Source: Dimorphilus gyrociliatus
Taxonomy: Eukaryota; Animalia; Annelida
DNA: 64,000 nucleotides
Direction: 5' to 3'
NCBI GenBank assembly: GCA_904063045.1
Contig: CAJFCJ010000007.1
Span: forward strand, 4,037,404-4,101,403
Shown: piece by piece, positions 49,288 through 64,000 of the stretch
How the letters are laid out: each line of letters starts with the position of its first letter
How positions within the stretch are numbered: the stretch's first letter is position 1
Made by a program: the position numbers and the translations under genes
The notes under the pieces: model-generated
What the model saw: only the letters and a program-made list of their open reading frames with translations
What the model was told of the DNA's origin: nothing
Database searches by the model: none

Positions 49288-50291
49288 ATGAAACGATCGG
49301 AAAGTAAAGTAGGTAGTTAATAATTTAGGAATTTAATTTCATTCATCTATAAATAAATCTTGTTTTCACGATTCAGTTGGCCAACCTCTTAAAACTCGCA
49401 CTTGTCTTCAATATTACCCTATTCATATTCTCTGTAGGAAGATATGTCGGTATTAAGACTAATATAGAACCTGATCCGCCTAAAATACCGGCGATCCGTC
49501 CAGTTCATCATACTTATAAGATTCCAAACATAATCCATTACGTCTGGTACAATGAAAAAGAAAAAGAACTAAAATTCCACCATCTACTTTCAATGCTCAG
49601 CTCTTTTAGGATACAAAACCCAGAAAAGATTATATTTCATACAAATAAAGAGCCAGTGGGAAAATATTGGAATGAGGCTAAAAGACAAATTACAAGCTTG
49701 AATATTAATTATCGTCAACCACCATTGAAATTGTTTGGGGAAGATGTTAAAAAACCCTTGTATTATACATCTCATTCAAACGTAGATAGAGTTAAAATTG
49801 TTCACGAGTATGGAGGTATCTATCTGGACTTGGATACTGTTGTTCTATCGCCCATGGAACCCCTACGTAATTACAGTTGTGTAATAGGACAAGAGCAATC
49901 GGATAAATCGTGCGGTTGCGTTTTCATGTGCGAAAAGAACGCACCATTCCTATCATTATGGTTAAATTCATATTTGGATGATTATAGAATAGAAGAATGG
50001 GCCTATAACTCTGGTAAGGTACCTTGGAAGTTAGCTCGCCGTTATCCGCAGCTAGTTTTTGTTGAAAAAAATAGACTTCTTAAACCAAACTTTAAGCATT
50101 TAGATCAACTATACGGAAAAGTGATAGTTGATTGGACGAAATCTATTACCATGCATCTTTGGTATAGGCTTGCAAAACAGTGGAATTTCCTAAAGGAGGA
50201 TCCTAACGAGGAGAATATTAAATTAATGGATACAACTTTCGGTCAAATAGCACGTTATATATATTTTGATAATTCAACTAGAAATAGATGA
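49288..50291 (+). CDS. Glycosyltransferase family 32 (DXD sugar-binding; A4GALT/A4GNT/OCH1-like), type II membrane protein
   Basis: Exon 1 MKRSESK spliced to a TM anchor (LLKLALVFNITLFIFSVG), then IPNIIHYVW, SNVDRVKIVHEYGGIYLDLDTV and YNSG. Confidence 0.85.
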
Positions 50292-52756
50292 TCTACGACA
50301 TTTTAGGATTTGATAAGAACATAATCAATAGCAATATAATCAGTATAGATAAGAGTAAAATTGTTGATATATACATTTTTATAGTTTCGTCTTTTTTCCT
50401 GTCCGTCTCGTCCCAACAAGGAAAGAGTCTAGGTTTTCTTTCGCTCTCTTTCGTTCTCATCTACATTAATCTTTTCACTCCTGGTTAAAAGAGTTTGTCA
50501 AACGTATTTGGGATAGTTTATACGTCTTTGATCGTAGAAGAAGCTTCTGGAGGGCGTCAAACCATTCAAAGATTGTCTGCTAGATATTGTGTCTTTTATT
50601 GTTTCCTGTTTCTTTTATCTTACGCAAATATATTAATTTATTATATTTTCTAATATATATTTCTATAGTTAATTGTTCACATATCACTAATATATAATTC
50701 ATTCTAAATGTTAGTTTAATTATATACAGTAAAGGAAGATAAACACCATTTTCCCTTGTTTAAAACACTATGTACCAGGTTAAAGCGTTTACATTGTTGA
50801 AATAAGCATCGTAGCCTTTGTAAATATCTATTTGCACTTAATATACTGCTATACTATAAGTTCTTACTAATATATACAGTATATATATACTGTATATATA
50901 ATTTGCAAATAAGGTCAAATGTAGAGGATTCGTTCATTATATATTTCTAATAAGTCATAAATGAGAAGTAAGCATTTTCAGTTTCTCTTGTTAGTATCCT
51001 TATAGAGAGAAGATGAAGTTTTCCATCAATGTAATAAATGTATTTTTAGAGAAAGTGAATTAATGATTTTCAGACGTGAAAATTATTAAAAACATGTCGA
51101 ATTTATTTCCATAATTGCCCTTTTTTCGTTAAAAAACATACTTATATTATAATTTAGTAAATAGTTTTCGGATTAAAGATTTTTACCAAACAGCAAAAAT
51201 CTGAAGATTACATTTAATCTTGATAGGAGAATTAAGCTTAAGCTCTATACGTCAAGGTCTGTATTGAATAATTCAGATTATTCAATTATTTGTTAAAATA
51301 ATGTATTAAAAAGGGAAAAGGAATAAAAAAAGGAAGATTTTGAAGAAAAGTTAAAGAAATATAGAGAAAAAGAGTTTAAATTTCAAAATTTCATAGTTAT
51401 AATTAACCTGTAAGAAATATTTAATAAAGAAATAAATAATAGCAAACGCTGCTTTTTATATATTAAAGATTTAATAATAACAAATAAATGAGTGTTAAAA
51501 AAATTGCAAATTCAATGAAAAATAAGTACCAATAATATAAAATAAGGTAATAGAATACGTGTATATACGTCTAAGACGTCTCTTTGTTTTTACTTAGCTA
51601 TTATGGTTTGGCGTTATTACAATTATTTTTTTTATTTTTAGTCAAGATGTTAGTTGTTATTTAAATAATAAATAATCATCATCATTTCAAGATCTTTTAA
51701 AATTAGTAATATTGTTCCATTATACAGTATATGGTACTTTGTTAGGGAAACTGATTTGAAATTCCATCAGTCGATATTCATTATTAGCTTTTAAGAGAGA
51801 GAAGGTTGTTGTTGTATTTTTCTATAGTGTCTCTATCATTTATAATTGTATCTAGATATTCAATGAATGAATGAAAAATTGCAGAACATACTGTGTGTTA
51901 TTAATTAGCTAATGTTAAGACCACTGAAATCAACTTTACCACCAATTTTCTCAATTACATCTGCAATAATACTTTCATGTTTATACAAGTAAAAATGTTA
52001 AAGGTTACGATTAATTAGACTTCTTTGCAGATTAAAATTGAGCGTCTAGATTGATGAAATATTTAATTAAATGTAATTATTAATTATTTATTTGTTTTAG
52101 GCTTTTTTTGTTTTATCACAAGAAAAATCACATTAAATTTCAATACAACTGTGTAGTTTAGGGAGTTAGTAATGTTTTTAACCTCTAGATGGTGTTATTG
52201 TCATAATTAAAAGTGGGAACACTTAAAGGTTAACATTATGTTCAAGTATCTCTCTTTTGAAAGTAATTGAACCGATAATAATGAATAAAATGTTGTGTTA
52301 TTGTTTTTGTTCTTCTGATTTATTCTGTTTGTCTACACATTTGGGATTTTGGAAAAATGAAAAAGTTTGAGCCTACCTATAACGCTGTTAAAGTTTTCCA
52401 TTATCTTATTTACTTAAAAGCGAGTGGACCTTCTTCTACTGTATTAATTATAAAATATCTGGACAAGCATTTAGGTAAGAAATACAATAGACTAGAGAGA
52501 AAGTATAGAAAACATACATTTTCAGAATAACAGCTAATGAAATAGCATGAAATTGTTATATTTTAATCAACCGTTAGGTGGTGCTTGAATATCGTCTGCT
52601 AAACAGCTTTGTTTTCTAACCGCTATTTTGAAACCTTGTGTAATTTACTTTGTCATTTCATCGTTAAACTGACATTCTACTTTCCATTGGTAAAATGGAC
52701 AAAAATTAGTATTGAATGTGACTTTTAATCGTTCACTTTTCAGGTAATAGAATTTT

Positions 52757-53267
52757 ATGATGGCCACTAACGATAATACAAATAATTCCAAATCATTTTC
52801 CACATCGGAAAATGAAATTCGCCAGATAATTGGGGAAGACTATGCTGGAGATTTGGTAATACTTATTAGCTAGAGTATTTCTTATGTTGTGATTAATACT
52901 AATGAATAATGTATATACTCAGGAAGGATCACAGCTACATGCGGTAGTTCCGAAATTGGATTGTCCTCACTTGAATGAAATCAATGAAGTAGGACCAGAT
53001 GGAATTAATATACAATCTCCATGCCTTGACTGTTCTAATATTGGAGAGAATTGGATTTGTCTGTCCTGTTATAAAGTATATTGCGGTCGATTTGTAAACG
53101 AACATATGCTAATGCACGGAATTGAGAGTAATCACCCACTAGTATTAAGTTTTGCGGATCTCTCAGTCTGGTGTTACAAATGCGATTCGTATATACATCA
53201 CCCTGCTTTACTTCCGGCGAAAAGAGCAGCGCACATCAACAAATTTGGAATTGATATTCATGTTTGA
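52757..53267 (+). CDS. Stand-alone HDAC6-type ZnF-UBP (BUZ) ubiquitin-binding protein, about 147 aa (2 exons)
   Basis: HAVVPKLDCPHL...PCLDCSNIGENWICLSCYKVYCGRFVNEHMLMH...HPLVLSFADLSVWCYKCDSYIHHPALL...AHINKFG matches the HDAC6 C-terminal zinc finger. No deacetylase-domain ORF lies upstream. Confidence 0.85.
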
Positions 53268-53382
53268 ACAGATTAGCAAAAAGCATAATCTCATAATATA
53301 ATATTTTTTAGAAATAGCACCCACATTTTAGTAAAGAAACAATGAAAATATGAAAATTAATAAACAAGTAAAAAAAAAAAAA

Positions 53383-55683
53383 CTAAACAGCAGTATAGTC
53401 TATACGCTCTCTACGTTCGAATGTCGTAACGGATGTATCGTCCGATATAGATACTCTATCTTTCTTTTTCACTCCATGATCTTGAATTGGTACGTCATGC
53501 ATTTCGTTATGTATTAATTCGCTACATGGTATCCAACAGCGAATCTTTTTACCTTCGTGCACTAATGGATAATCATTTGGATGAAATCTTAAGTAGTACA
53601 AGAGCATGAATGTAATTCCAATCCAAAATCCCAATACAACTACTAATAGAGCAGGTAAATGATACGGTAAATCATTGGTTTGACTTGAAATAAACCAAAA
53701 AAATGTAAGGATTAAATTTTCAATATAAACTAATGTATAGAACATTGCGTATCTTAATCTCGTGTGGCCTTCTGTAACATTGAAAAAGCAGTATAAGTGT
53801 ATCCAAGCAACAACAACATCGAAGAAAAACTCTGCACATCTCCTTCGTTCACCCTTCTCGTCTTGGAAAAACGACGTATTTTGATATAAAATCCAAGTCA
53901 GTACTATGACGTAATGAACTCCGCAAAAGACAAAAATGTACCATGTAAATGCTGATGCAAATAAAGCCATTGCCAATACTCTAGTTCCAATTGTAAAATA
54001 ACGCCAACCAAACTGCAAGATAATACCCGGAAAGGCATTTCCGCATTCAGTAACTGATGATTTGCGTTCAGGCTGTGAGATTCTTAAAGCTCTAAAATAA
54101 GCCGTTAAAGACCAAGCCAGAGATCCAATAGAGAGAACAATCGAGAAGAACTGTCCAATCACTGTTTGTTCATTCAAAAAACAGAGAATACAGTTTATTA
54201 GGAAAATATGTTTGTTAGGTTTACTTTAAATTCAAACGGATGGTTGATTAGATCTCAGTTGATTAGCAGGCTAAGCGCATGCGTAAGATAAAAATATGTG
54301 GGATGAAGAGAAATGGGATAAAATTTCATGCATATCCCGTTCACTTACTGGTCAACAACTTTAAATATTCAGACATTTCATTCCTATGTTCTTTTTTAAG
54401 GTAATCATTTTTAATAAAATAACTTTTACTCTTTTTTAAAAAGAAGTTTGAAGAAATCTTTAAAAACTTACTGAAAATCACGTGATCCGTTCCATAAACT
54501 TGAGTTAATACATAAAGCTGAAAAACCAACTGGGGGGCAGATTCAAGAAAGCATTCAAACAATTTCAGCATGCTGGCATCAACATCCTCGTATCTGGGAT
54601 TGGCCGATTGTGAAGGAAAGAAAATGACAATCTTATAAATAATATTAACAAATCACTTACAGCATCATATCTATTGCCCGAAGTCTATCTCTGCCTTTTG
54701 ATCTCCGAGATTTACAACCATAGTAGATAGTATCAATATATCTAAGTGGTTATCAACGTTGTTTAAGTGGAATCAGAGCAAAGTGTACTAAGCAAATATT
54801 ATCTATCATCTTACCTAAGTACCGGTCCGAATTGTAAAATAACGCAAAATATTCTACAAAACCATCTCTTTTTTGATGGTTTCTCTAACTTAATTATTTC
54901 TTCATCTCCACAGATCATTAACTTTTTATAGTCAACATAATACCAATACAATGAAAAAGCTGAGGACACTAAGGAAGGCCCAACGATAAAGATTACTGTC
55001 AGAACAAACCACCAAATCTTTCCGTTCATAAAATACAATACGGCTACAAAAACGTCACTTGCAACATCAAAGAAGTAAAAGAGTATTCCAGTGAGAGAAA
55101 TCAAAAAGTCACAATTTGTAAAGCGTATAGTAGGTAAAGTTGCATGGTGAGGCTCTTTCACACTACTTTCTAATAATGGAACACTACCTGAGGTTGGGAG
55201 TATTAGGCTACTTCTGGGTGTTGGATCAGCAGATGATACGCTTGGGAATCTCTTTAGGCTTTCAAGTGTTCCTTCCTTTGAACTTCTCGTAAAAAATTCA
55301 CCTGCTTCCGCTCCAAGAGAAAGATCTCTTTGATTAACTGAACAACTATCAGTTTCGCTTCCATTCAATTCCAATGAATCTGTTTGTTGGGTTTTTTTCC
55401 CAAAATTTGTCTTTGTTCGCCTAATCTTTGTACCCGGATAGGGAGAACAGTTTGAAGCGGTTCTGGGGGGAAACGAAACGTCACAGAAGACTTCATTCTC
55501 TTCTTCAATAATAGTTTCTTTGATGCTAAAATTCAAGTTTCTCCCATCGGATGCATCTCGAATAGACCTTTTTTTTTCACTTTGTGAGTTGTCTTTATAT
55601 AATTTGGCTAATTTTTCATATTTTTTACACCTTGTTTGAGGTAATTTGGGTAACGGTGGCGCCATTTTACTAGTAAGGATCAT
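53383..55683 (-). CDS. XK-related protein (XKR4/6-like scramblase family; 4 exons)
   Basis: FFDVASDVFVAVLYF, LQFGPVLR|YI, YEDVDASMLKLFECFLESAPQLVFQLY, SLAWSLTAY, TRVLAMALFAS, FNVTEGHTRLR and YYLRFHPN. Confidence 0.88.
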
Positions 55684-55867: not shown

Positions 55868-58286
55868 TCATGGCTTTCGGCAGATTAGTTCTATGTTCAG
55901 TTCTTTCAATTTTTTGTAAGTTTTCTTGTTATTTCTTACAAGTTTAATATTGCTTTAGTTAGATTGATATTTAATGAATTAAATAGAGAGTTTGTAGAAG
56001 TATTGCTTTAATATATTGCAGTTTTGAGCACTGTTGACGGGCGTAAAGAGCCGCCATCATGGCAAGAAAAAAGTTATGCTGTAAATGGCTATTTACAACT
56101 TCCTTATGCAGAGATCAAAGAGCCATTTGCTGCTCATTACGATGCTAAAAATAGGAAAAGTCGCATTGACTATTACGGTAAAAATTTTCTTGTCTTATCT
56201 CTTGTTTTTGATCTTCTTTGTTTTTGATAGATACTGTCAAGACCATACAAATAGGAGCCAATGACGAAAACAACTATGGTGTAAGCTATAAAATAGCTCC
56301 AATGACAACTTACAAGGTAAGAATTTTACAAAACTAAAAAAAGATCAATTAACATTCTTATTTTATTTAGGTACTCAACAAGAACACCTGTTTTCAAATA
56401 TCTGGAACAAAAGACGCGCCAATAGCACCTCAAAGTGTTCTACCGGATTTGACAAACTACACAGTAATAAACATAAGATAATATTTAATATTGAAAAATA
56501 TAGTAAGAGAGTACTAATTAATTTAATCAACTACATAGTTTATGGGTACGGAAATGAAAAATGGTTTAAGCTGTGACAAATGGCAATACACATATTACTA
56601 TGAGAAGAGTCAAAAGAAAAATGTTAACACCATGTGGGCTCACAATGCTGGTAAGCGACTTTAATACTATAATAACATCCGATTGATTGTAAAAATACTA
56701 TTAATAAATTATTTAGGTGGCAATAAATACAATCCAGTTTTTTATGAAATGATGGGATATGATAATATATTTGGTTCACATTACGATAAATATTATGTAT
56801 CTTATGAAAATTTTGACGATCATGGTGAAATTCCAGCCAGCGTTTTTAATATATCGATTATTGGTTTGTATCGAATTGCAGTTTTTTTAATGTATATTCT
56901 ATGTATTTTTGTGTTTCAATAGCCAAGGAATTGACTTGTGGTGGATTTCCCGGACCTGGCAGTGAAAAAGAAGGGCATATATTGTTTAATCCTATGAAGG
57001 AATATATTAATAATTATGATGAACACGTTGATCATTTATTTAATATATTCAAGAAGAAACACGGAAAAAAGTACAGTCATCCACATGAACATGAAGAGAA
57101 AAAACATATATTTAGACAAAATTTGAGGTAAAATTTTTTAATAAATGCTTACTAAATTTTTAATTAATTATATACCTATGTCCATAGATATATTCATTCA
57201 ATGAATCGGCAAGGATTAACTTTTAATTTAGCTGTTAATCATTTTGCTGATCGGATTAAGAGTGATTTAAAATTTTTAAGAGGAAAATTATATACACCTG
57301 GATCAAATGGTGCTTTACCGTACGATAAGAAAAGATACGAGACTGTCAAAGATTTACCTAAAGATTTCGATTGGAGGATACCAGGTAAACAAAAGGATTT
57401 CAATAAAATCAGTATCAAATTAATTTGATCGATTAATTATATAGTATTTGTAATGTATAATTTTAATTTTAGGTGCCGTTACACCTGTTAAAGATCAATC
57501 AATTTGTGGTTCTTGCTGGAGTTTTGGTACAACTGGTACGATTGAAGGCGCTCACTTTCTTAAGACAGGTCGTCTTGTATCTCTTTCCCAGCAAGTTTTA
57601 GTCGATTGTTCTTGGGGTGAAGGTAATAATCATACGAAATTTCGTTAATATAAATTTAAGGATAGTTTGTAGATATACAATAATGTGTTCTAATAATGTA
57701 AATGTTTATCTAGGAAACAATGCTTGTGACGGCGGGGAAGACTATAGAGCCTATCGCTGGATCATTAAAAATAACGGTATTCCAACATCTGATTCATATG
57801 GTGCTTATAAAGGAACTGATGGAAAATGTCATTCAAAGTCGCCCGGACTTGAAATTGGAGCAAAAATTAAAAATTACGTAAATGTCACTGCTTATGATGT
57901 TGAAGCATTAAAAAAGAGCTTAGTCTCACAAGGACCAATATCTATTGGTATTGATGCTTCTCACAGAAGTCTTTCTTTCTACTCTCACGGAGTTTACAGC
58001 GATCCCAAATGCGGTTTGTTTAATTAATTACTATAACAATTCCTTTTTATTCATCTTTTTCCTAATTAAAAAATCATTTCCTTTCTATTTTCCATTAGGC
58101 AATAAACCAGAGGATTTAGATCACGCTGTATTATTGGTTGGGTATGGTACGTTGGATGGTAAAGACTATTGGTTAATTAAGAATTCCTGGTCTACCTACT
58201 GGGGTAACGATGGTTACTTTTTAATGGATCAAGCTAAAAATATGTGCGGTGTTACTACTTCTCCTACTTTTGTAATAGTGGACTGA
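55864..58286 (+). CDS. Papain-family cysteine protease, 26/29-kDa proteinase (counting factor-associated protein D) type
   Basis: Signal peptide, N-terminal 26-kDa domain ([30 protein letters not shown]), I29 prodomain (IFRQNLR|YIHSMNR...AVNHFAD), and catalytic [20 protein letters not shown] and YWLIKNSW. Confidence 0.92.
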
Positions 58287-60316: not shown

Positions 60317-63300
60317 CTATGCGTTAGCTTCGTTCCAAAATGCATAAGTGACTTCTTCCATTTGAGGAAACATTATGTCCTAATTGAAAAAAGAATATGA
60401 TTAGTAATTTTCTGTAGGCAGTATATTTGTTAATTTACCGCTTTCTTCAAGTTTGGAGAAGGACCGGTAACGTGTACCCATTCACGTAATTCAGCCATTC
60501 CAATACTTTTATTGTGAGCTGTCTTTTTCTATTATCAAAATAATAATGTAGGAATTAAGCTCCAATGTTTTTTAATATTTTTAAATAGATACCTTCATTG
60601 GGGGTTCACCCAAATCACAGGTACAGTTTAGCTGTTCATGTGTCAAACATAGTGTGTCGTAATTAAAAGAAAATAAGTCTTTCAGTTCCTCATTACTAAA
60701 ATGACATTTAGATTTTCTTTTAGCATCAACAACGGCTCCACTCAATATTTGTTTCGAAGCTTGTCTTTGAAACATCTTCTCTTCAATTGTTCCCTATTAA
60801 AAATGTTTTTAACACAAATGCAAACTTTTAAATATAGCATAAAAAAAGTATTGCATATTACTAACAGTTGTTAGAAATCTATAAATTTTAACTCTATTCT
60901 TTTGACCATCTCGCCAAATTCTTGCCATGGCTTGGGCATCGTGAGCTGGATTCCAGTCAACATCATATAAGATCAAACGAGAGGCTCCTACAAGATTAAA
61001 GCCAACACCACCAGCTTTGCAACTTAATAATAATATATCTAAAGTGAAATTAATAATAGAGAACAAACATTGATATGTAATGAAAAACTAACAATAGTTG
61101 CAGTATGAAGAATTGAAATCGTCAACAATTTTCTGTCGTTTATTAGTTCCTGTGGTGCCATCTAAACGGCAAAATTTGTAACTTTGCTCTTCGCACAATT
61201 TTTGGAGAACGTTCAAGGTCTAAAGTTTAAAGTAATAAACAAAAATATTATTTTATACCAAGAATATCCTATGGTCGTACAGCCTATATACAGTATTGTA
61301 TAAAGTTAAGATTAAAGACATACACGATTAAGGAAACGAAGTGTTTTATTAGAAAAAATGAACAGATAATATGATGAGCTCACAATAGAATTATTCAATG
61401 AAAAGAGATTCGAATCAAGAGCTGCAGGGTTACTTTTTTTTATTTGAATAATTTCCTAGAAATTTTTGTTGCTTTTGTTTTCAACCGTATCCTATTCAAG
61501 GACTTCTTACAAGCTCTGGTTTTTGTCGTTGATGATAGGGTTATATTCGACACTGGTTGCCAAACGCTTAAATTGCTCATAACATACAAACATAACAATA
61601 TTCCAAGAACCCAGTCTCATGAAAGCCGGTCCAAATCCTTTGTAAAATGAGGATACACCACCTTCTTTATATATTTTTACAGCGCAATTGATTGCTCCAC
61701 TATAAACATTTGGTGGTGAATTCATAAATCTGGTTTTAACTACATCAATAGGCGATGCAATACAAGTTGTTACGAAACCAGCTGAGAAAGCCGAAACAAA
61801 ATGGCAGGGCATGCTATCTTTCATAAGATTCGTCATTAAAATTTTTTCCTTTATTAAATCATAGCTAACCAATTCGGCGGCATTGGTTACTGAATTTCTT
61901 GTTACGTTTGGTATGATACCTTTCCACAACCCACGAACACCTTCTGTTGTTGCTATTTTGCGATACGCGGCAAAGGTTCCAGAATATATTTTTTTCTTTT
62001 GTGCTTGCATTCGAACTTTAACAACATCAGTGGGTTGGGCTACTGATACTGCTAAACCACCAGTAGTAATGCCAGCCAATATTCTTAAGCCAACGTTTTG
62101 ACTGCTGATATAATCCCCTTTTGTCAAAATATCGATGTAGAATGATTTTACAGAATCGTAAAGGCCTATACGGATGGAAGCAAAAGCCATTTGTCTATGT
62201 AGACCAGGAACTAAACCTTTATAAAGGGCCCTAACGCCTTCTTCTTTACTCATTGTTAGCATAGTTCCAAAAAGTCCTCTGTACTTCAATTGATTTTTTA
62301 ACAGTGTAGCGCCTTCTCCTTGAATCTTTAATAATAAATTGAAAAATTATTAGTCACAACGGATTTCTTAGTAATGCTACTGACTTACTTGTAATCTAAC
62401 TTTTGCAGTATCCAGAGGAATAGTAGTTGCTTCGGCAACACATGCTGCAGCACCTGCACAAAAGAATTTTGTTGGAATTGGAGTTGTGGTATCTACTTTT
62501 GGTCCCATTGTGCGACTATTTTAAGGGGATTAAAGATGGAAAAGAAAGTGTTGGCGAGAGATGTTCTCTTTGGAAGCTGCGGCTTATAAGCATCAGCTAC
62601 TCGTTTTTATAGTAAAAAACTATGATCTGACTGGTTAAAAGTCGTACGATAATCTATTTCAAGGCTGAACGAAGTCTGTTAAATGTACGATCTAATCTAG
62701 TACATTTTAATAGTTATAACTGATTACGCAGAAGTGCCAAATGACGAAATAAGCGTGGATGTTATACTCAAATGAATACGCTAATAGGTTTAATTTCAGT
62801 ATCGTTCAAGGAAAGATATATATATTTATATATTTAGATAAAAATAGATTACTCACCTTGGTAACATTTGGAAAAAAAAATTAAATACGACTCTTCTTAG
62901 TGTCTTAAAAATAGCGCTCGAACACTCGTGGGCGGCACGAGTTGATAACGTAATATTGCATATAGGCTTTACAAAATAAAGGAGTAAAATATCCCTTTGA
63001 ATTCCTTACAAAGCCATTAATTAATTTAGAGAGTAAACACGACAAATTCTAGCTGTATGAATTCTTAAAGAGGTATAAAATATAACAAATATGCTATGAC
63101 TAAAGCCTACAATAACTTAATTTACAAGGAGAGTTTACACTAACCTGAGTATAATTAGAGACGAGAACTATTTTTTCCTTGCCTTTGGATTCTTCATACA
63201 CGTTAGCTAATAATTGACTTAAAACTTTCAACTTTCCGCTATATTCTGGATTGGATTTTGACAGATCAATGTCCTTCGGGAAGGCGCTCTGTAAAACTTT

Positions 63301-64000
63301 CTGAGCATTGACAATCTATGAAAAGATTTAGATTAGATTTCTCGGAAATTAGTGAAATAAAATATTAACAAGACTTTTATCTCCTTCTTCGAGCTCATTT
63401 TCATCGTCTATAATATCGTCCCGATACAGTAAACTGGGGTGATTACACAATTTTTTCAGCGCGGAAATAAGCATAAGATGTTGGGCTGAATCAGAAGTAT
63501 GTATACATTCATTTACTACACCGGATGATAATAGTTTTTCATAAAGTTTCATTTGTAGTTCTACTGGTCTGCAAAATATAACGATCTCCACTTTTGGTGG
63601 GAGATATTGCCGGTTCACTTCTGAAGTACGTCTCAGAAGAAATAGTGACGTTATACGGCCCAACTCAATCGCTCTTTTCTCTCCCAGAGCTCTTTGCTCC
63701 TTATCAGCACTGGGCATTCTTGATTTAACGATCGGTTCTTCATACAATCTTCGAAATGATGCACTATTACCTAAAAAAACAATCTAGTCTATTATCAGTT
63801 GTAGATAAAGGTTCTAAGAGTTATATTACCCAATAATCCAGGGTTGCAAAAATCGGCTATTGAAAAAAGTTCCTGTAAGTCATTCTGAACTGGTGTTCCA
63901 GACAAAACAATTCTTCTTGTACATGGAATGCTGGATATACACTGGAAATTTTTATATCAGGAAATTATATGATTGATCTTTTTGAAAAACTACGAACACT
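60317..64000 (-). CDS. RAD54B: DNA repair and recombination protein RAD54B (5' part outside the window)
   Basis: [25 protein letters not shown]...LGEKRA.EL...LLRRT...[30 protein letters not shown]|[48 protein letters not shown] and [11 protein letters not shown]. Confidence 0.9.
61507..62508 (-). CDS. UCP2: Mitochondrial uncoupling protein UCP2/3-like carrier, nested in the 61220-63144 intron of RAD54B (2 coding exons)
   Basis: AGAAACVAE...[10 protein letters not shown]|[60 protein letters not shown] and [17 protein letters not shown]. Probably a co-orthologue of vertebrate UCP1-3. Confidence 0.93.

What the first reader, a model, noticed from the sequence alone, without database searches (positions are those of the whole stretch)
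52757..53267. HDAC6 ubiquitin-binding zinc finger as a free-standing gene (possible HDAC6 fission)
Seen: about 147 aa made of a 33-aa leader plus a complete HDAC6-type ZnF-UBP. The pocket residues equivalent to human R1155, W1182, Y1184 and Y1189 are kept and Y1156 is F. The upstream 2.4 kb is AT-rich with no deacetylase ORF, and the previous same-strand gene is unrelated. Known: in HDAC6 this domain binds the free ubiquitin C-terminus for aggresome and stress responses and is fused to tandem deacetylase domains. Inference: a split HDAC6 working in trans, or a dedicated unanchored-ubiquitin sensor or decoy.
Basis: partly seen in the sequence, partly recalled or inferred. Interest (0 to 1): 0.75.

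Follow-up and report, generated by a model that had tools for sequence, protein, structure and literature searches.

The report
Free-standing HDAC6-type ubiquitin-binding zinc finger
A tiny marine worm (Dimorphilus gyrociliatus) carries the ubiquitin-tail-binding zinc finger of the enzyme HDAC6 as its own small two-exon gene, while its only HDAC6-like deacetylase is a one-domain gene on another contig; this is a clean natural split of a well-known fused protein, and similar short forms are on record in other animals.

Summary
Window 52757-53267 (+) holds a two-exon gene: exon 1 at 52757-52855, a 67-bp GT-AG intron, and exon 2 at 52923-53267. It matches the deposited 146-aa protein DgyrCDS6666 of the annelid Dimorphilus gyrociliatus.

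Exon 2 is a complete HDAC6-type ZnF-UBP. Its best solved matches are zebrafish and human HDAC6 zinc fingers (E 2e-40 and 5e-38), against 2e-14 for the best USP. All 12 Cys/His positions and pocket residues W1143, R1155, W1182, Y1184 and Y1189 are kept; Y1156 is F.

It is not the tail of a longer gene:
- In-frame stops lie just before the ATG here and in a related species.
- No deacetylase exon lies in the window.
- The genome's only class IIb deacetylase is a 356-aa, single, CD2-like domain gene on another contig, with no zinc finger.

The related species has the same gene in the same gene order, under purifying selection.

The fused CD1-CD2-ZnF form is found in brachiopod, nemertean, mollusc, priapulid and echinoderm. 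The split is therefore derived.

It is not unique. Short zinc-finger-only forms are on record for nematodes, Saccoglossus, Octopus and others. I found no paper on them.

The parts
52742..52750 (+). AG dinucleotide (52742-52743) followed by in-frame TAA and TAG (52745-52750), just upstream of the start codon
   Evidence: Read. All three frames are closed between this AG and the body of exon 1, so no upstream coding exon can run into this ORF. The related species also has an AG 13 nt before its ATG and an in-frame TGA. It may be the acceptor of a 5'-UTR intron; this is an inference.
52757..52855 (+). Exon 1: start codon (52757; the deposited model uses 52760) and a 32/33-aa leader
   Evidence: Conserved in the related species: 56% aa identity, omega about 0.34, same ATG and same donor site. 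No Pfam family. Low-confidence in the model apart from a short helix at residues 17-23. Its IRQIIGE stretch aligns with a linker motif that precedes the zinc finger in fused HDAC6 proteins.
52856..52922 (+). Intron, 67 bp, GT..AG, phase 0
   Evidence: The species' median intron is 66 bp (PMC7854359). The intron of the related species is 114 bp and is not conserved in sequence.
52923..53267 (+). Exon 2: complete HDAC6-type ZnF-UBP (114 codons) and the TGA stop
   Evidence: Against the related species: 75% aa identity, pN 0.14 against pS 0.85.
53022..53207 (+). Core matched by Pfam zf-UBP (residues 34-95 of exon 2)
53359..53364 (+). AATAAA, a possible polyadenylation signal 92 nt after the stop
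   Evidence: Read. It is a motif match in AT-rich DNA and no more.

Best explanation
This is a real, self-contained two-exon gene of Dimorphilus gyrociliatus. Its product of 146 or 147 aa is a short, mostly disordered leader followed by an intact HDAC6-type ZnF-UBP.

The gene is what remains of the 3' part of an ancestral fused HDAC6 (CD1-CD2-ZnF). That gene came apart in the lineage leading to dinophilid annelids. The catalytic side survives as a 356-aa, single, CD2-like deacetylase gene on another contig. CD1 is gone.

Inferred function: the protein binds free ubiquitin C-termini (the unanchored -RLRGG end) through the same deep pocket as the HDAC6 zinc finger. Because no enzyme is attached, it would act as a stand-alone reader or adaptor of unanchored ubiquitin.

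Shown here: gene structure, domain identity, conserved residues, separation from the catalytic gene, and conservation with purifying selection in a second species.

Inferred only: expression, ubiquitin binding and any partner.
For: Domain identity:
- Pfam zf-UBP at 77.5 bits.
- HDAC6 zinc fingers at E 2e-40 to 4e-37, against USP49 at 2e-14.
- The AF2 model has pLDDT about 97 over residues 38-146. It overlays HDAC6 ZnF structures, including ubiquitin-bound 3phd and 3gv4, at rmsd 0.6-1.4 A and TM 0.93-0.98.
- Eleven of the 12 Cys/His positions, plus W76, R88, W115, Y117 and Y122, are invariant across 26 homologues; the twelfth, H93, is nearly invariant. The pocket roles of these residues come from 10.1101/268557 and PMC3268394.

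Self-contained gene:
- In-frame stops lie 6-12 nt before the ATG here and in the related species.
- Only the two exons are conserved across 2.6 kb.
- The deposited annotation gives the same 146-aa model.
- The published genome analysis found no sign of trans-splicing or operons.

Separation from catalysis:
- Seven Hist_deacetyl loci in the genome, none in the window.
- The one class IIb gene is at C4:1414653-1415938 (-). It has 4 exons and encodes 356 aa, with a stop right after the domain.
- There is no zf-UBP match on that contig.
- This gene is the only HDAC6-type zinc finger in the genome.

The C4 gene is CD2-like:
- PDB bit scores are CD2 > HDAC10 or CD1 for both large exons.
- Its DPLG motif matches the CD2s that could be read.
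- Exon D sits in the CD2 clade at SH-aLRT 86.

The fused form is ancestral: CD1-CD2-ZnF proteins occur in Lingula, Tubulanus, Haliotis, Crassostrea, Mizuhopecten, Solemya, Mya, Priapulus and echinoderms.

Selection and synteny:
- A related species (75% aa identity) has the same gene, followed in the same order by XKR, cathepsin, helicase and mitochondrial carrier genes.
- pN is 0.14 against pS 0.85 in exon 2.
Against:
- Ubiquitin binding is inferred from conserved residues. The complex test gave no verdict.
- Y1156, which hydrogen-bonds the ubiquitin C-terminus in human HDAC6, is F here. F or H at this position is common in the invertebrate homologues.
- No annelid with a fused HDAC6 was recovered, so the split cannot be dated within annelids.
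- The catalytic gene is fast-evolving. No confirmed HDAC10 sequence was in the tree, so an HDAC10 origin for it is disfavoured but not excluded.
Confidence: 0.78

Rival explanations
1. The two exons are the last exons of a longer HDAC6 gene. Its catalytic exons were missed, lie far upstream, or are joined by trans-splicing.
For: In most animals this domain is the C-terminus of HDAC6. In Elysia the zinc-finger gene lies 74 kb downstream, on the same strand, of a 94-kb HDAC6 gene without a zinc finger, so split annotations elsewhere can be artefacts. An AG lies 13 nt before the ATG in both species.
Against: - Stops close all frames between that AG and the ORF, in both species.
- No deacetylase match lies in the 64-kb window.
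- The nearest Hist_deacetyl match on the contig is a class IIa gene about 306 kb away on the other strand.
- The class IIb gene is on another contig and ends in a stop.
- The median intron is 66 bp, and the published analysis found no sign of trans-splicing.
Confidence: 0.05
2. It belongs to an old, independent family of single-domain ZnF-UBP genes that has always been separate from HDAC6. Dimorphilus kept that gene and its HDAC6 simply lost its own zinc finger.
For: - Zinc-finger-only proteins of 110-157 aa are on record for nematodes, Saccoglossus, Strigamia, Elysia, Octopus and a crustacean.
- The Atlas holds large clusters of zf-UBP-only proteins of about 145 aa, commonest in plants.
Against: - In the zinc-finger tree the short forms sit next to fused forms of similar taxa. 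Halocaridina sits with Procambarus, and the nematode forms sit with a 910-aa fused protein. They do not form one clade. The tree is poorly resolved.
- Within one 90%-identity cluster, short Tegillarca entries sit with a 763-aa protein that carries a catalytic domain.
- The leader carries the linker motif of fused HDAC6.
- No genome examined here was shown to hold both a fused zinc finger and a separate one.
Confidence: 0.12
3. It is a decaying remnant: a non-functional relic left behind when HDAC6 was lost.
For: The genome is compacted and has lost many genes (PMC7854359). CD1 has been lost.
Against: - The frame is open, and the start, splice sites and stop are kept in two species that are saturated at silent sites (pS 0.85) with pN 0.14.
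- All 12 zinc-binding positions and all pocket positions but Y1156 (F here) are kept.
Confidence: 0.04

Closest known systems
C-terminal ZnF-UBP (also called BUZ or PAZ) domain of vertebrate HDAC6 (PDB 3c5k, 3gv4, 3phd, 5g0f)
   Same: 54-57% identity over about 100 residues. Same 12 Cys/His positions. Same pocket residues: W1143, R1155, L1162, W1182, Y1184 and Y1189. The predicted fold overlays at 0.6-1.4 A.
   Different: It is not attached to any deacetylase domain. It has its own start codon and a leader of about 32 aa. Y1156 is F.
Zinc-finger-only HDAC6-type entries in sequence databases: Steinernema, Ascaris, Anisakis and Aphelenchus at 130-140 aa; Saccoglossus 151 aa; Strigamia 155 aa; Octopus 'HDAC6' entries of 107-151 aa
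   Same: Same architecture: a short variable leader followed by one HDAC6-type ZnF-UBP. The Steinernema and Saccoglossus genes also have no deacetylase neighbour within 10 kb.
   Different: They lie in different lineages. They do not group with the Dimorphilus gene in the tree, apart from weak proximity to Saccoglossus. None was found described in the papers searched. Some may be annotation fragments, for example Tegillarca and possibly Elysia.
ZnF-UBP of USP5 (isopeptidase T), the classic reader of the free ubiquitin C-terminus
   Same: Same fold and the same kind of ligand pocket (PMC3268394).
   Different: Only 22-24% identity in the structural alignment, and it sits within a USP protease. 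The window protein has no catalytic domain.
Oscarella lobularis HDAC6-like protein (535 aa, one catalytic domain plus ZnF-UBP)
   Same: It shows that a single CD2-like domain together with the zinc finger is a viable reduced HDAC6.
   Different: There the two parts are still one polypeptide. In Dimorphilus they are two genes on two contigs.

Membership tests
ZnF-UBP domain (Pfam PF02148), HDAC6 subtype | Match to the family profile above its curated cut-off | tested here: met
   77.5 bits against a cut-off of 22.7; profile positions 1-62 of 63.
ZnF-UBP domain (Pfam PF02148), HDAC6 subtype | Twelve Cys/His zinc ligands in register (three zinc sites) | tested here: met
   C46, H48, C66, C69, C78, C81, C86, H93, H97, H103, C116 and C119 of P0001 align with Cys/His of human and zebrafish HDAC6. 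Eleven are invariant and H93 is nearly invariant in 26 homologues. That these are the metal ligands is taken from knowledge of the solved structures.
ZnF-UBP domain (Pfam PF02148), HDAC6 subtype | Pocket residues for the ubiquitin C-terminal diglycine: W1143, R1155, Y1156, W1182, Y1184 and Y1189 | tested here: met
   Five of six are identical and Y1156 is F. Their roles are from 10.1101/268557. The R1155A/Y1184A mutant abolishes binding (PMC3268394).
ZnF-UBP domain (Pfam PF02148), HDAC6 subtype | Closer to HDAC6 zinc fingers than to those of USPs or BRAP2 | tested here: met
   130-141 bits to HDAC6 against 57 bits or less to any USP. The genome's other zf-UBP loci are at most 35% identical.
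ZnF-UBP domain (Pfam PF02148), HDAC6 subtype | Binds free ubiquitin or the RLRGG peptide | tested here: inconclusive
   The complex prediction with the genome's own ubiquitin gave no verdict. A binding assay is needed.
HDAC6 (class IIb protein deacetylase) | Hist_deacetyl catalytic domain(s) in the same polypeptide as the zinc finger | tested here: not met
   No PF00850 in the protein or in the window. Stops lie before the ATG. It is therefore an HDAC6-derived domain and not an HDAC6 enzyme.
USP or BRAP2-type ZnF-UBP proteins | A UCH protease domain or a RING finger alongside the zinc finger | tested here: not met
   zf-UBP is the only Pfam family on either exon.

The most novel reading that the evidence does not exclude
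The ubiquitin-tail reader of HDAC6 is an autonomous module that has come loose from the enzyme several times in invertebrates: dinophilid annelids, several nematodes, a hemichordate and perhaps cephalopods. In Dimorphilus the detached 146-aa protein would be kept under selection as a dedicated reader of unanchored ubiquitin that needs no attached deacetylase. The leftover one-domain deacetylase would work without ubiquitin targeting.
Probability: 0.35. Interest if true: 0.6.

Novelty: new variant of a known kind. Interest (0 to 1): 0.42.

Why it matters
In mammals, HDAC6 is thought to couple ubiquitin sensing (aggresome formation, stress granules, responses to infection) to deacetylation because the two activities sit in one protein.

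An animal that keeps both parts under selection as separate genes, with one catalytic domain discarded, is a natural experiment. It asks whether the physical link is needed.

It also offers a small natural protein that may read unanchored ubiquitin on its own. Tools for that ligand are being engineered now (PMC13614405, listed).

A practical point: gene surveys that count 'hdac6/10' by the catalytic domain alone will miss such detached zinc fingers. PMC12153100 trimmed its sequences to that domain.

Tried and rejected
Steps that gave nothing:
No reads were laid, so there is no expression or junction evidence. Searches worked beside them.
- Complex prediction of the zinc finger with the genome's own ubiquitin gave no verdict (score 0.16). 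It counts neither for nor against binding.
- Supplements of PMC12153100 are stored cut, and no HDAC gene table was reachable.
- Three literature searches for a described stand-alone HDAC6 zinc finger found none.
- No annelid with a fused HDAC6 turned up in the word searches or among the 30 representatives and homologues I looked up by name.
- The catalytic-domain tree had no confirmed HDAC10. The one protein carrying that name has two domains and a CD2-type motif. The tree left exon C unresolved.
- The sigma-70 promoter scan does not apply to an animal gene.

Handling of spliced models:
- The spliced zinc-finger model was never typed or joined. The stored protein P0001, identical to it from the second ATG, served as its reference.
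- The four exons of the C4 deacetylase gene were joined only inside a script, to count frame and length. The joined protein was not searched. Its exons were searched apart.

Rejected readings: tail of a longer gene, pseudogene, and ancient separate family. See the rival explanations.

Full report
**What is there**

The window is G000:C7:4037404-4101403 of a 77.9-Mb genome. A protein search with exon 2 returned a 100% identical 146-aa entry, DgyrCDS6666 of the annelid Dimorphilus gyrociliatus.

The sequence reads as follows:
- ATG at 52757, with a second ATG at 52760.
- 99 nt of coding sequence to 52855.
- A 67-bp GT..AG intron at 52856-52922.
- 114 codons from 52923 to the TGA at 53265-53267.

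The deposited protein (P0001) equals this spliced model from the second ATG. The intron length matches the species' median of 66 bp (PMC7854359).

**Domain identity**

- Exon 2 matches Pfam zf-UBP at 77.5 bits, against a cut-off of 22.7. Exon 1 matches nothing.
- Against all solved structures, the top six hits are HDAC6 zinc fingers: zebrafish 5g0f at 2.1e-40, and human entries at 3.5e-38 to 3.9e-37. The next hit, USP49, scores 1.9e-14.
- In that alignment the human numbering is P0001 plus 1067.
- The 12 Cys/His positions are all present: C46, H48, C66, C69, C78, C81, C86, H93, H97, H103, C116 and C119.
- So are W76 (W1143), R88 (R1155), L95 (L1162), W115 (W1182), Y117 (Y1184) and Y122 (Y1189). 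Y1156 is F89.
- These residues form the pocket for the ubiquitin C-terminal carboxylate and diglycine (10.1101/268557). R1155A/Y1184A abolishes ubiquitin binding (PMC3268394).
- Across 26 homologues, all of these positions are invariant except H93, which is nearly invariant, and L95 and F89, which vary.
- An AlphaFold2 model built on that alignment has pLDDT about 97 for residues 38-146. The leader scores about 55 and shows one short helix at residues 17-23.
- The model overlays HDAC6 ZnF structures, including the ubiquitin-bound 3phd and 3gv4, at rmsd 0.6-1.4 A and target TM 0.93-0.98.

**Is it the end of a longer gene?**

No, on five counts.

1. Between an AG at 52742-52743 and the ATG lie TAA and TAG in the ATG's frame. 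The other two frames also close, at 52757-52759 and at 52768-52770.
2. A related species shows the same picture. It comes from Logan assemblies of SRR23372228 and SRR23372229 and is 75% identical in protein. It has an ATG, an in-frame TGA just before it, an AG 13 nt upstream, a conserved donor site and a 114-bp intron.
3. Between the two species, only the two exons are conserved across 2.6 kb.
4. The whole-genome scan for Hist_deacetyl finds seven loci and none in the window. tblastn with full-length HDAC6 of Lingula, Tubulanus and Crassostrea hits only the zinc-finger exon.
5. The published genome analysis found no sign of spliced-leader trans-splicing or operons in this species (PMC7854359).

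**Where the catalytic side went**

The seven deacetylase loci read as two HDAC1/2 genes, HDAC3, HDAC8, HDAC11, one class IIa gene and one class IIb gene. The class IIa gene is at C7:3784k on the minus strand, about 306 kb from the zinc finger. The tally agrees with PMC12153100, which notes the HDAC1/2 duplication.

The class IIb gene:
- It lies at C4:1414653-1415938 (-).
- It has four exons, GT-AG introns of 57, 71 and 87 bp, and a 1071-nt coding sequence of 356 aa.
- It starts at the beginning of the catalytic fold and stops right after it.
- It is flanked by a gene that I read by eye as a GPCR and, divergently, by one that looks tryptophanase-like. There is no room for a second domain.
- Contig C4 has no zf-UBP match.

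Its two large exons score best against HDAC6 CD2:
- Exon c: CD2 100-103 bits, HDAC10 92, CD1 86-88.
- Exon d: CD2 88-91, CD1 80-85, HDAC10 72.

Its GFDAMENDPLG motif has the Leu found in the 18 CD2 domains in which the motif was found. Three deuterostome CD1 domains read DPKG instead. In a tree of CD1 and CD2 domains, exon D falls in the CD2 clade (SH-aLRT 86) and exon C is unresolved. Both sit on long branches, and no confirmed HDAC10 was available.

The gene is divergent. It reads RPPNHHA where the family has RPPGHHA. It keeps the tandem His, the DWDIHHGNG block and the EGGY motif.

This zinc finger is the only HDAC6-type one in the genome. The other zf-UBP loci are BRAP2 and more distant ones.

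**Direction of change**

Fused CD1-CD2-ZnF proteins occur in a brachiopod, a nemertean, gastropod and bivalve molluscs, a priapulid, echinoderms and vertebrates. The fused form is therefore ancestral for the group that contains annelids, and the Dimorphilus state is derived.

The leader supports descent from the HDAC6 linker. Its IRQIIGE stretch aligns with a hydrophobic-x-x-hydrophobic-hydrophobic-G motif about 20 residues before the zinc finger in fused HDAC6: Lingula VRELLGG, Tubulanus INGLIGQ, Priapulus LVAFLGL. This is a short motif and only suggestive.

**Constraint**

Against the related species, exon 2 has pN 0.14 and pS 0.85 (saturated). Exon 1 has omega about 0.34.

Gene order after the zinc-finger gene is the same in both species: XK-related (-), cathepsin (+), an unnamed gene (-), helicase C-terminal (-), mitochondrial carrier (-). 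The split therefore predates their divergence, and the gene is maintained.

**How unusual it is**

Less unusual than it first looks. Zinc-finger-only proteins with HDAC6-type sequence are on record for several taxa:
- Steinernema: 132 and 140 aa. In S. carpocapsae the neighbours are MOSC and forkhead genes, with no deacetylase within 10 kb.
- Ascaris, Anisakis and Aphelenchus.
- Saccoglossus: 151 aa, intronless, with no deacetylase among the genes called within 10 kb.
- Strigamia.
- Elysia: 157 aa.
- Octopus: entries named 'HDAC6' of 107-151 aa.

An exhaustive profile search found 67 representatives at E <= 1e-30. Of the 150 best hits, many are short or carry several zinc fingers and have no deacetylase domain. 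These include protist proteins with two to four copies.

Some of these are annotation fragments or are doubtful:
- Short Tegillarca entries cluster at 90% identity with a 763-aa protein that carries a catalytic domain.
- In Elysia the zinc-finger gene lies 74 kb downstream, on the same strand, of a 94-kb HDAC6 gene that lacks a zinc finger. The two may be one unit.

In a poorly resolved tree of 177 zinc-finger domains, the short forms are scattered among fused forms and do not make one clade. Dimorphilus and its relative sit among invertebrate HDAC6 zinc fingers. This favours repeated detachment over one old separate family, but it does not settle the matter. The Atlas also lists large clusters of zf-UBP-only proteins of about 145 aa, mostly from plants.

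I found no paper that describes a free-standing HDAC6 zinc finger.

**Mechanism and its standing**

Every residue that makes the HDAC6 pocket is kept, apart from Y1156F. F or H at that position is common in invertebrate homologues. The most likely activity is therefore binding of free ubiquitin C-termini.

Without an attached enzyme, the protein could do one of three things:
- mark or bridge unanchored chains and aggregates to a partner through its leader;
- compete with other readers of unanchored ubiquitin;
- recruit the one-domain deacetylase in trans.

None of these was tested. The complex prediction with the genome's own ubiquitin gave no verdict.

**Limits**

Those places were not sent to any tool afterwards.
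- The split cannot be dated within annelids.
- The origin of the C4 gene (HDAC6 CD2 rather than HDAC10) rests on scores, one motif and one weakly supported placement.

**Verdict**

The 'free-standing gene from an HDAC6 split' reading is supported at the genome level. 'Works in trans' and 'sensor or decoy' remain open.

It is a new variant of a known kind, of moderate interest.

Noticed in passing
G000:C4:1414653-1415938 (-), loci L002/L026: The genome's only class IIb deacetylase is a minimal 356-aa, single CD2-like domain. It reads RPPNHHA where the family has RPPGHHA and HLESP where the family has HPExP. It sits on a long branch in the tree.
   Followed up: partly
window 52742-52743 and L023 about 919-920: An AG preceded by a T-rich tract lies exactly 13 nt upstream of the start codon in both species. 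It may be the acceptor of a 5'-UTR intron. No conserved upstream exon was seen.
   Followed up: partly
window 53383-55683 (-): A two-exon XK-related gene (PF09815, 8e-52 and 2e-18) converges on the zinc-finger gene. Its stop codon lies only about 115 nt from the zinc-finger gene's stop, so the 3' UTRs probably overlap.
   Followed up: no
window 49377-50291 (+): An intronless 304-aa glycosyltransferase with a DXD sugar-binding region (PF04488). It is the previous same-strand gene.
   Followed up: no
L028 and L036 (Elysia crispata contig JAWDGP010004637.1): A 918-aa HDAC6 gene without a zinc finger spans 94 kb. A 157-aa zinc-finger-only gene lies 74 kb further on, on the same strand, with other annotated genes between them. 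This is either one very long gene split by annotation or an in-place split.
   Followed up: partly
Proteins P0089 and P0399-P0411 (Octopus bimaculoides, O. sinensis, O. vulgaris): Entries named 'histone deacetylase 6' have up to seven isoforms per species, all 134-151 aa, plus two UniRef entries of 100-107 aa. They are zinc-finger only and differ in length.
   Followed up: no
Proteins P0023-P0031 (Paratrimastix, Peranema, Durinskia and unnamed): The highest-scoring hits of the exhaustive search are protist proteins with two to four tandem HDAC6-type ZnF-UBP domains and no deacetylase domain.
   Followed up: no
G000:C7:3783793-3785745 (-), locus L001: The class IIa deacetylase lies in one uninterrupted 650-aa reading frame. 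It keeps the catalytic Tyr (LEGGY), as I expect for non-vertebrate class IIa enzymes from my own knowledge.
   Followed up: no
window 56901-58024 (+) and 60812-63747 (-): A cathepsin gene (I29 propeptide plus Peptidase_C1), then helicase C-terminal, mitochondrial carrier and SNF2 pieces on the minus strand. They stand in the same order as in the related species' contig L023.
   Followed up: partly
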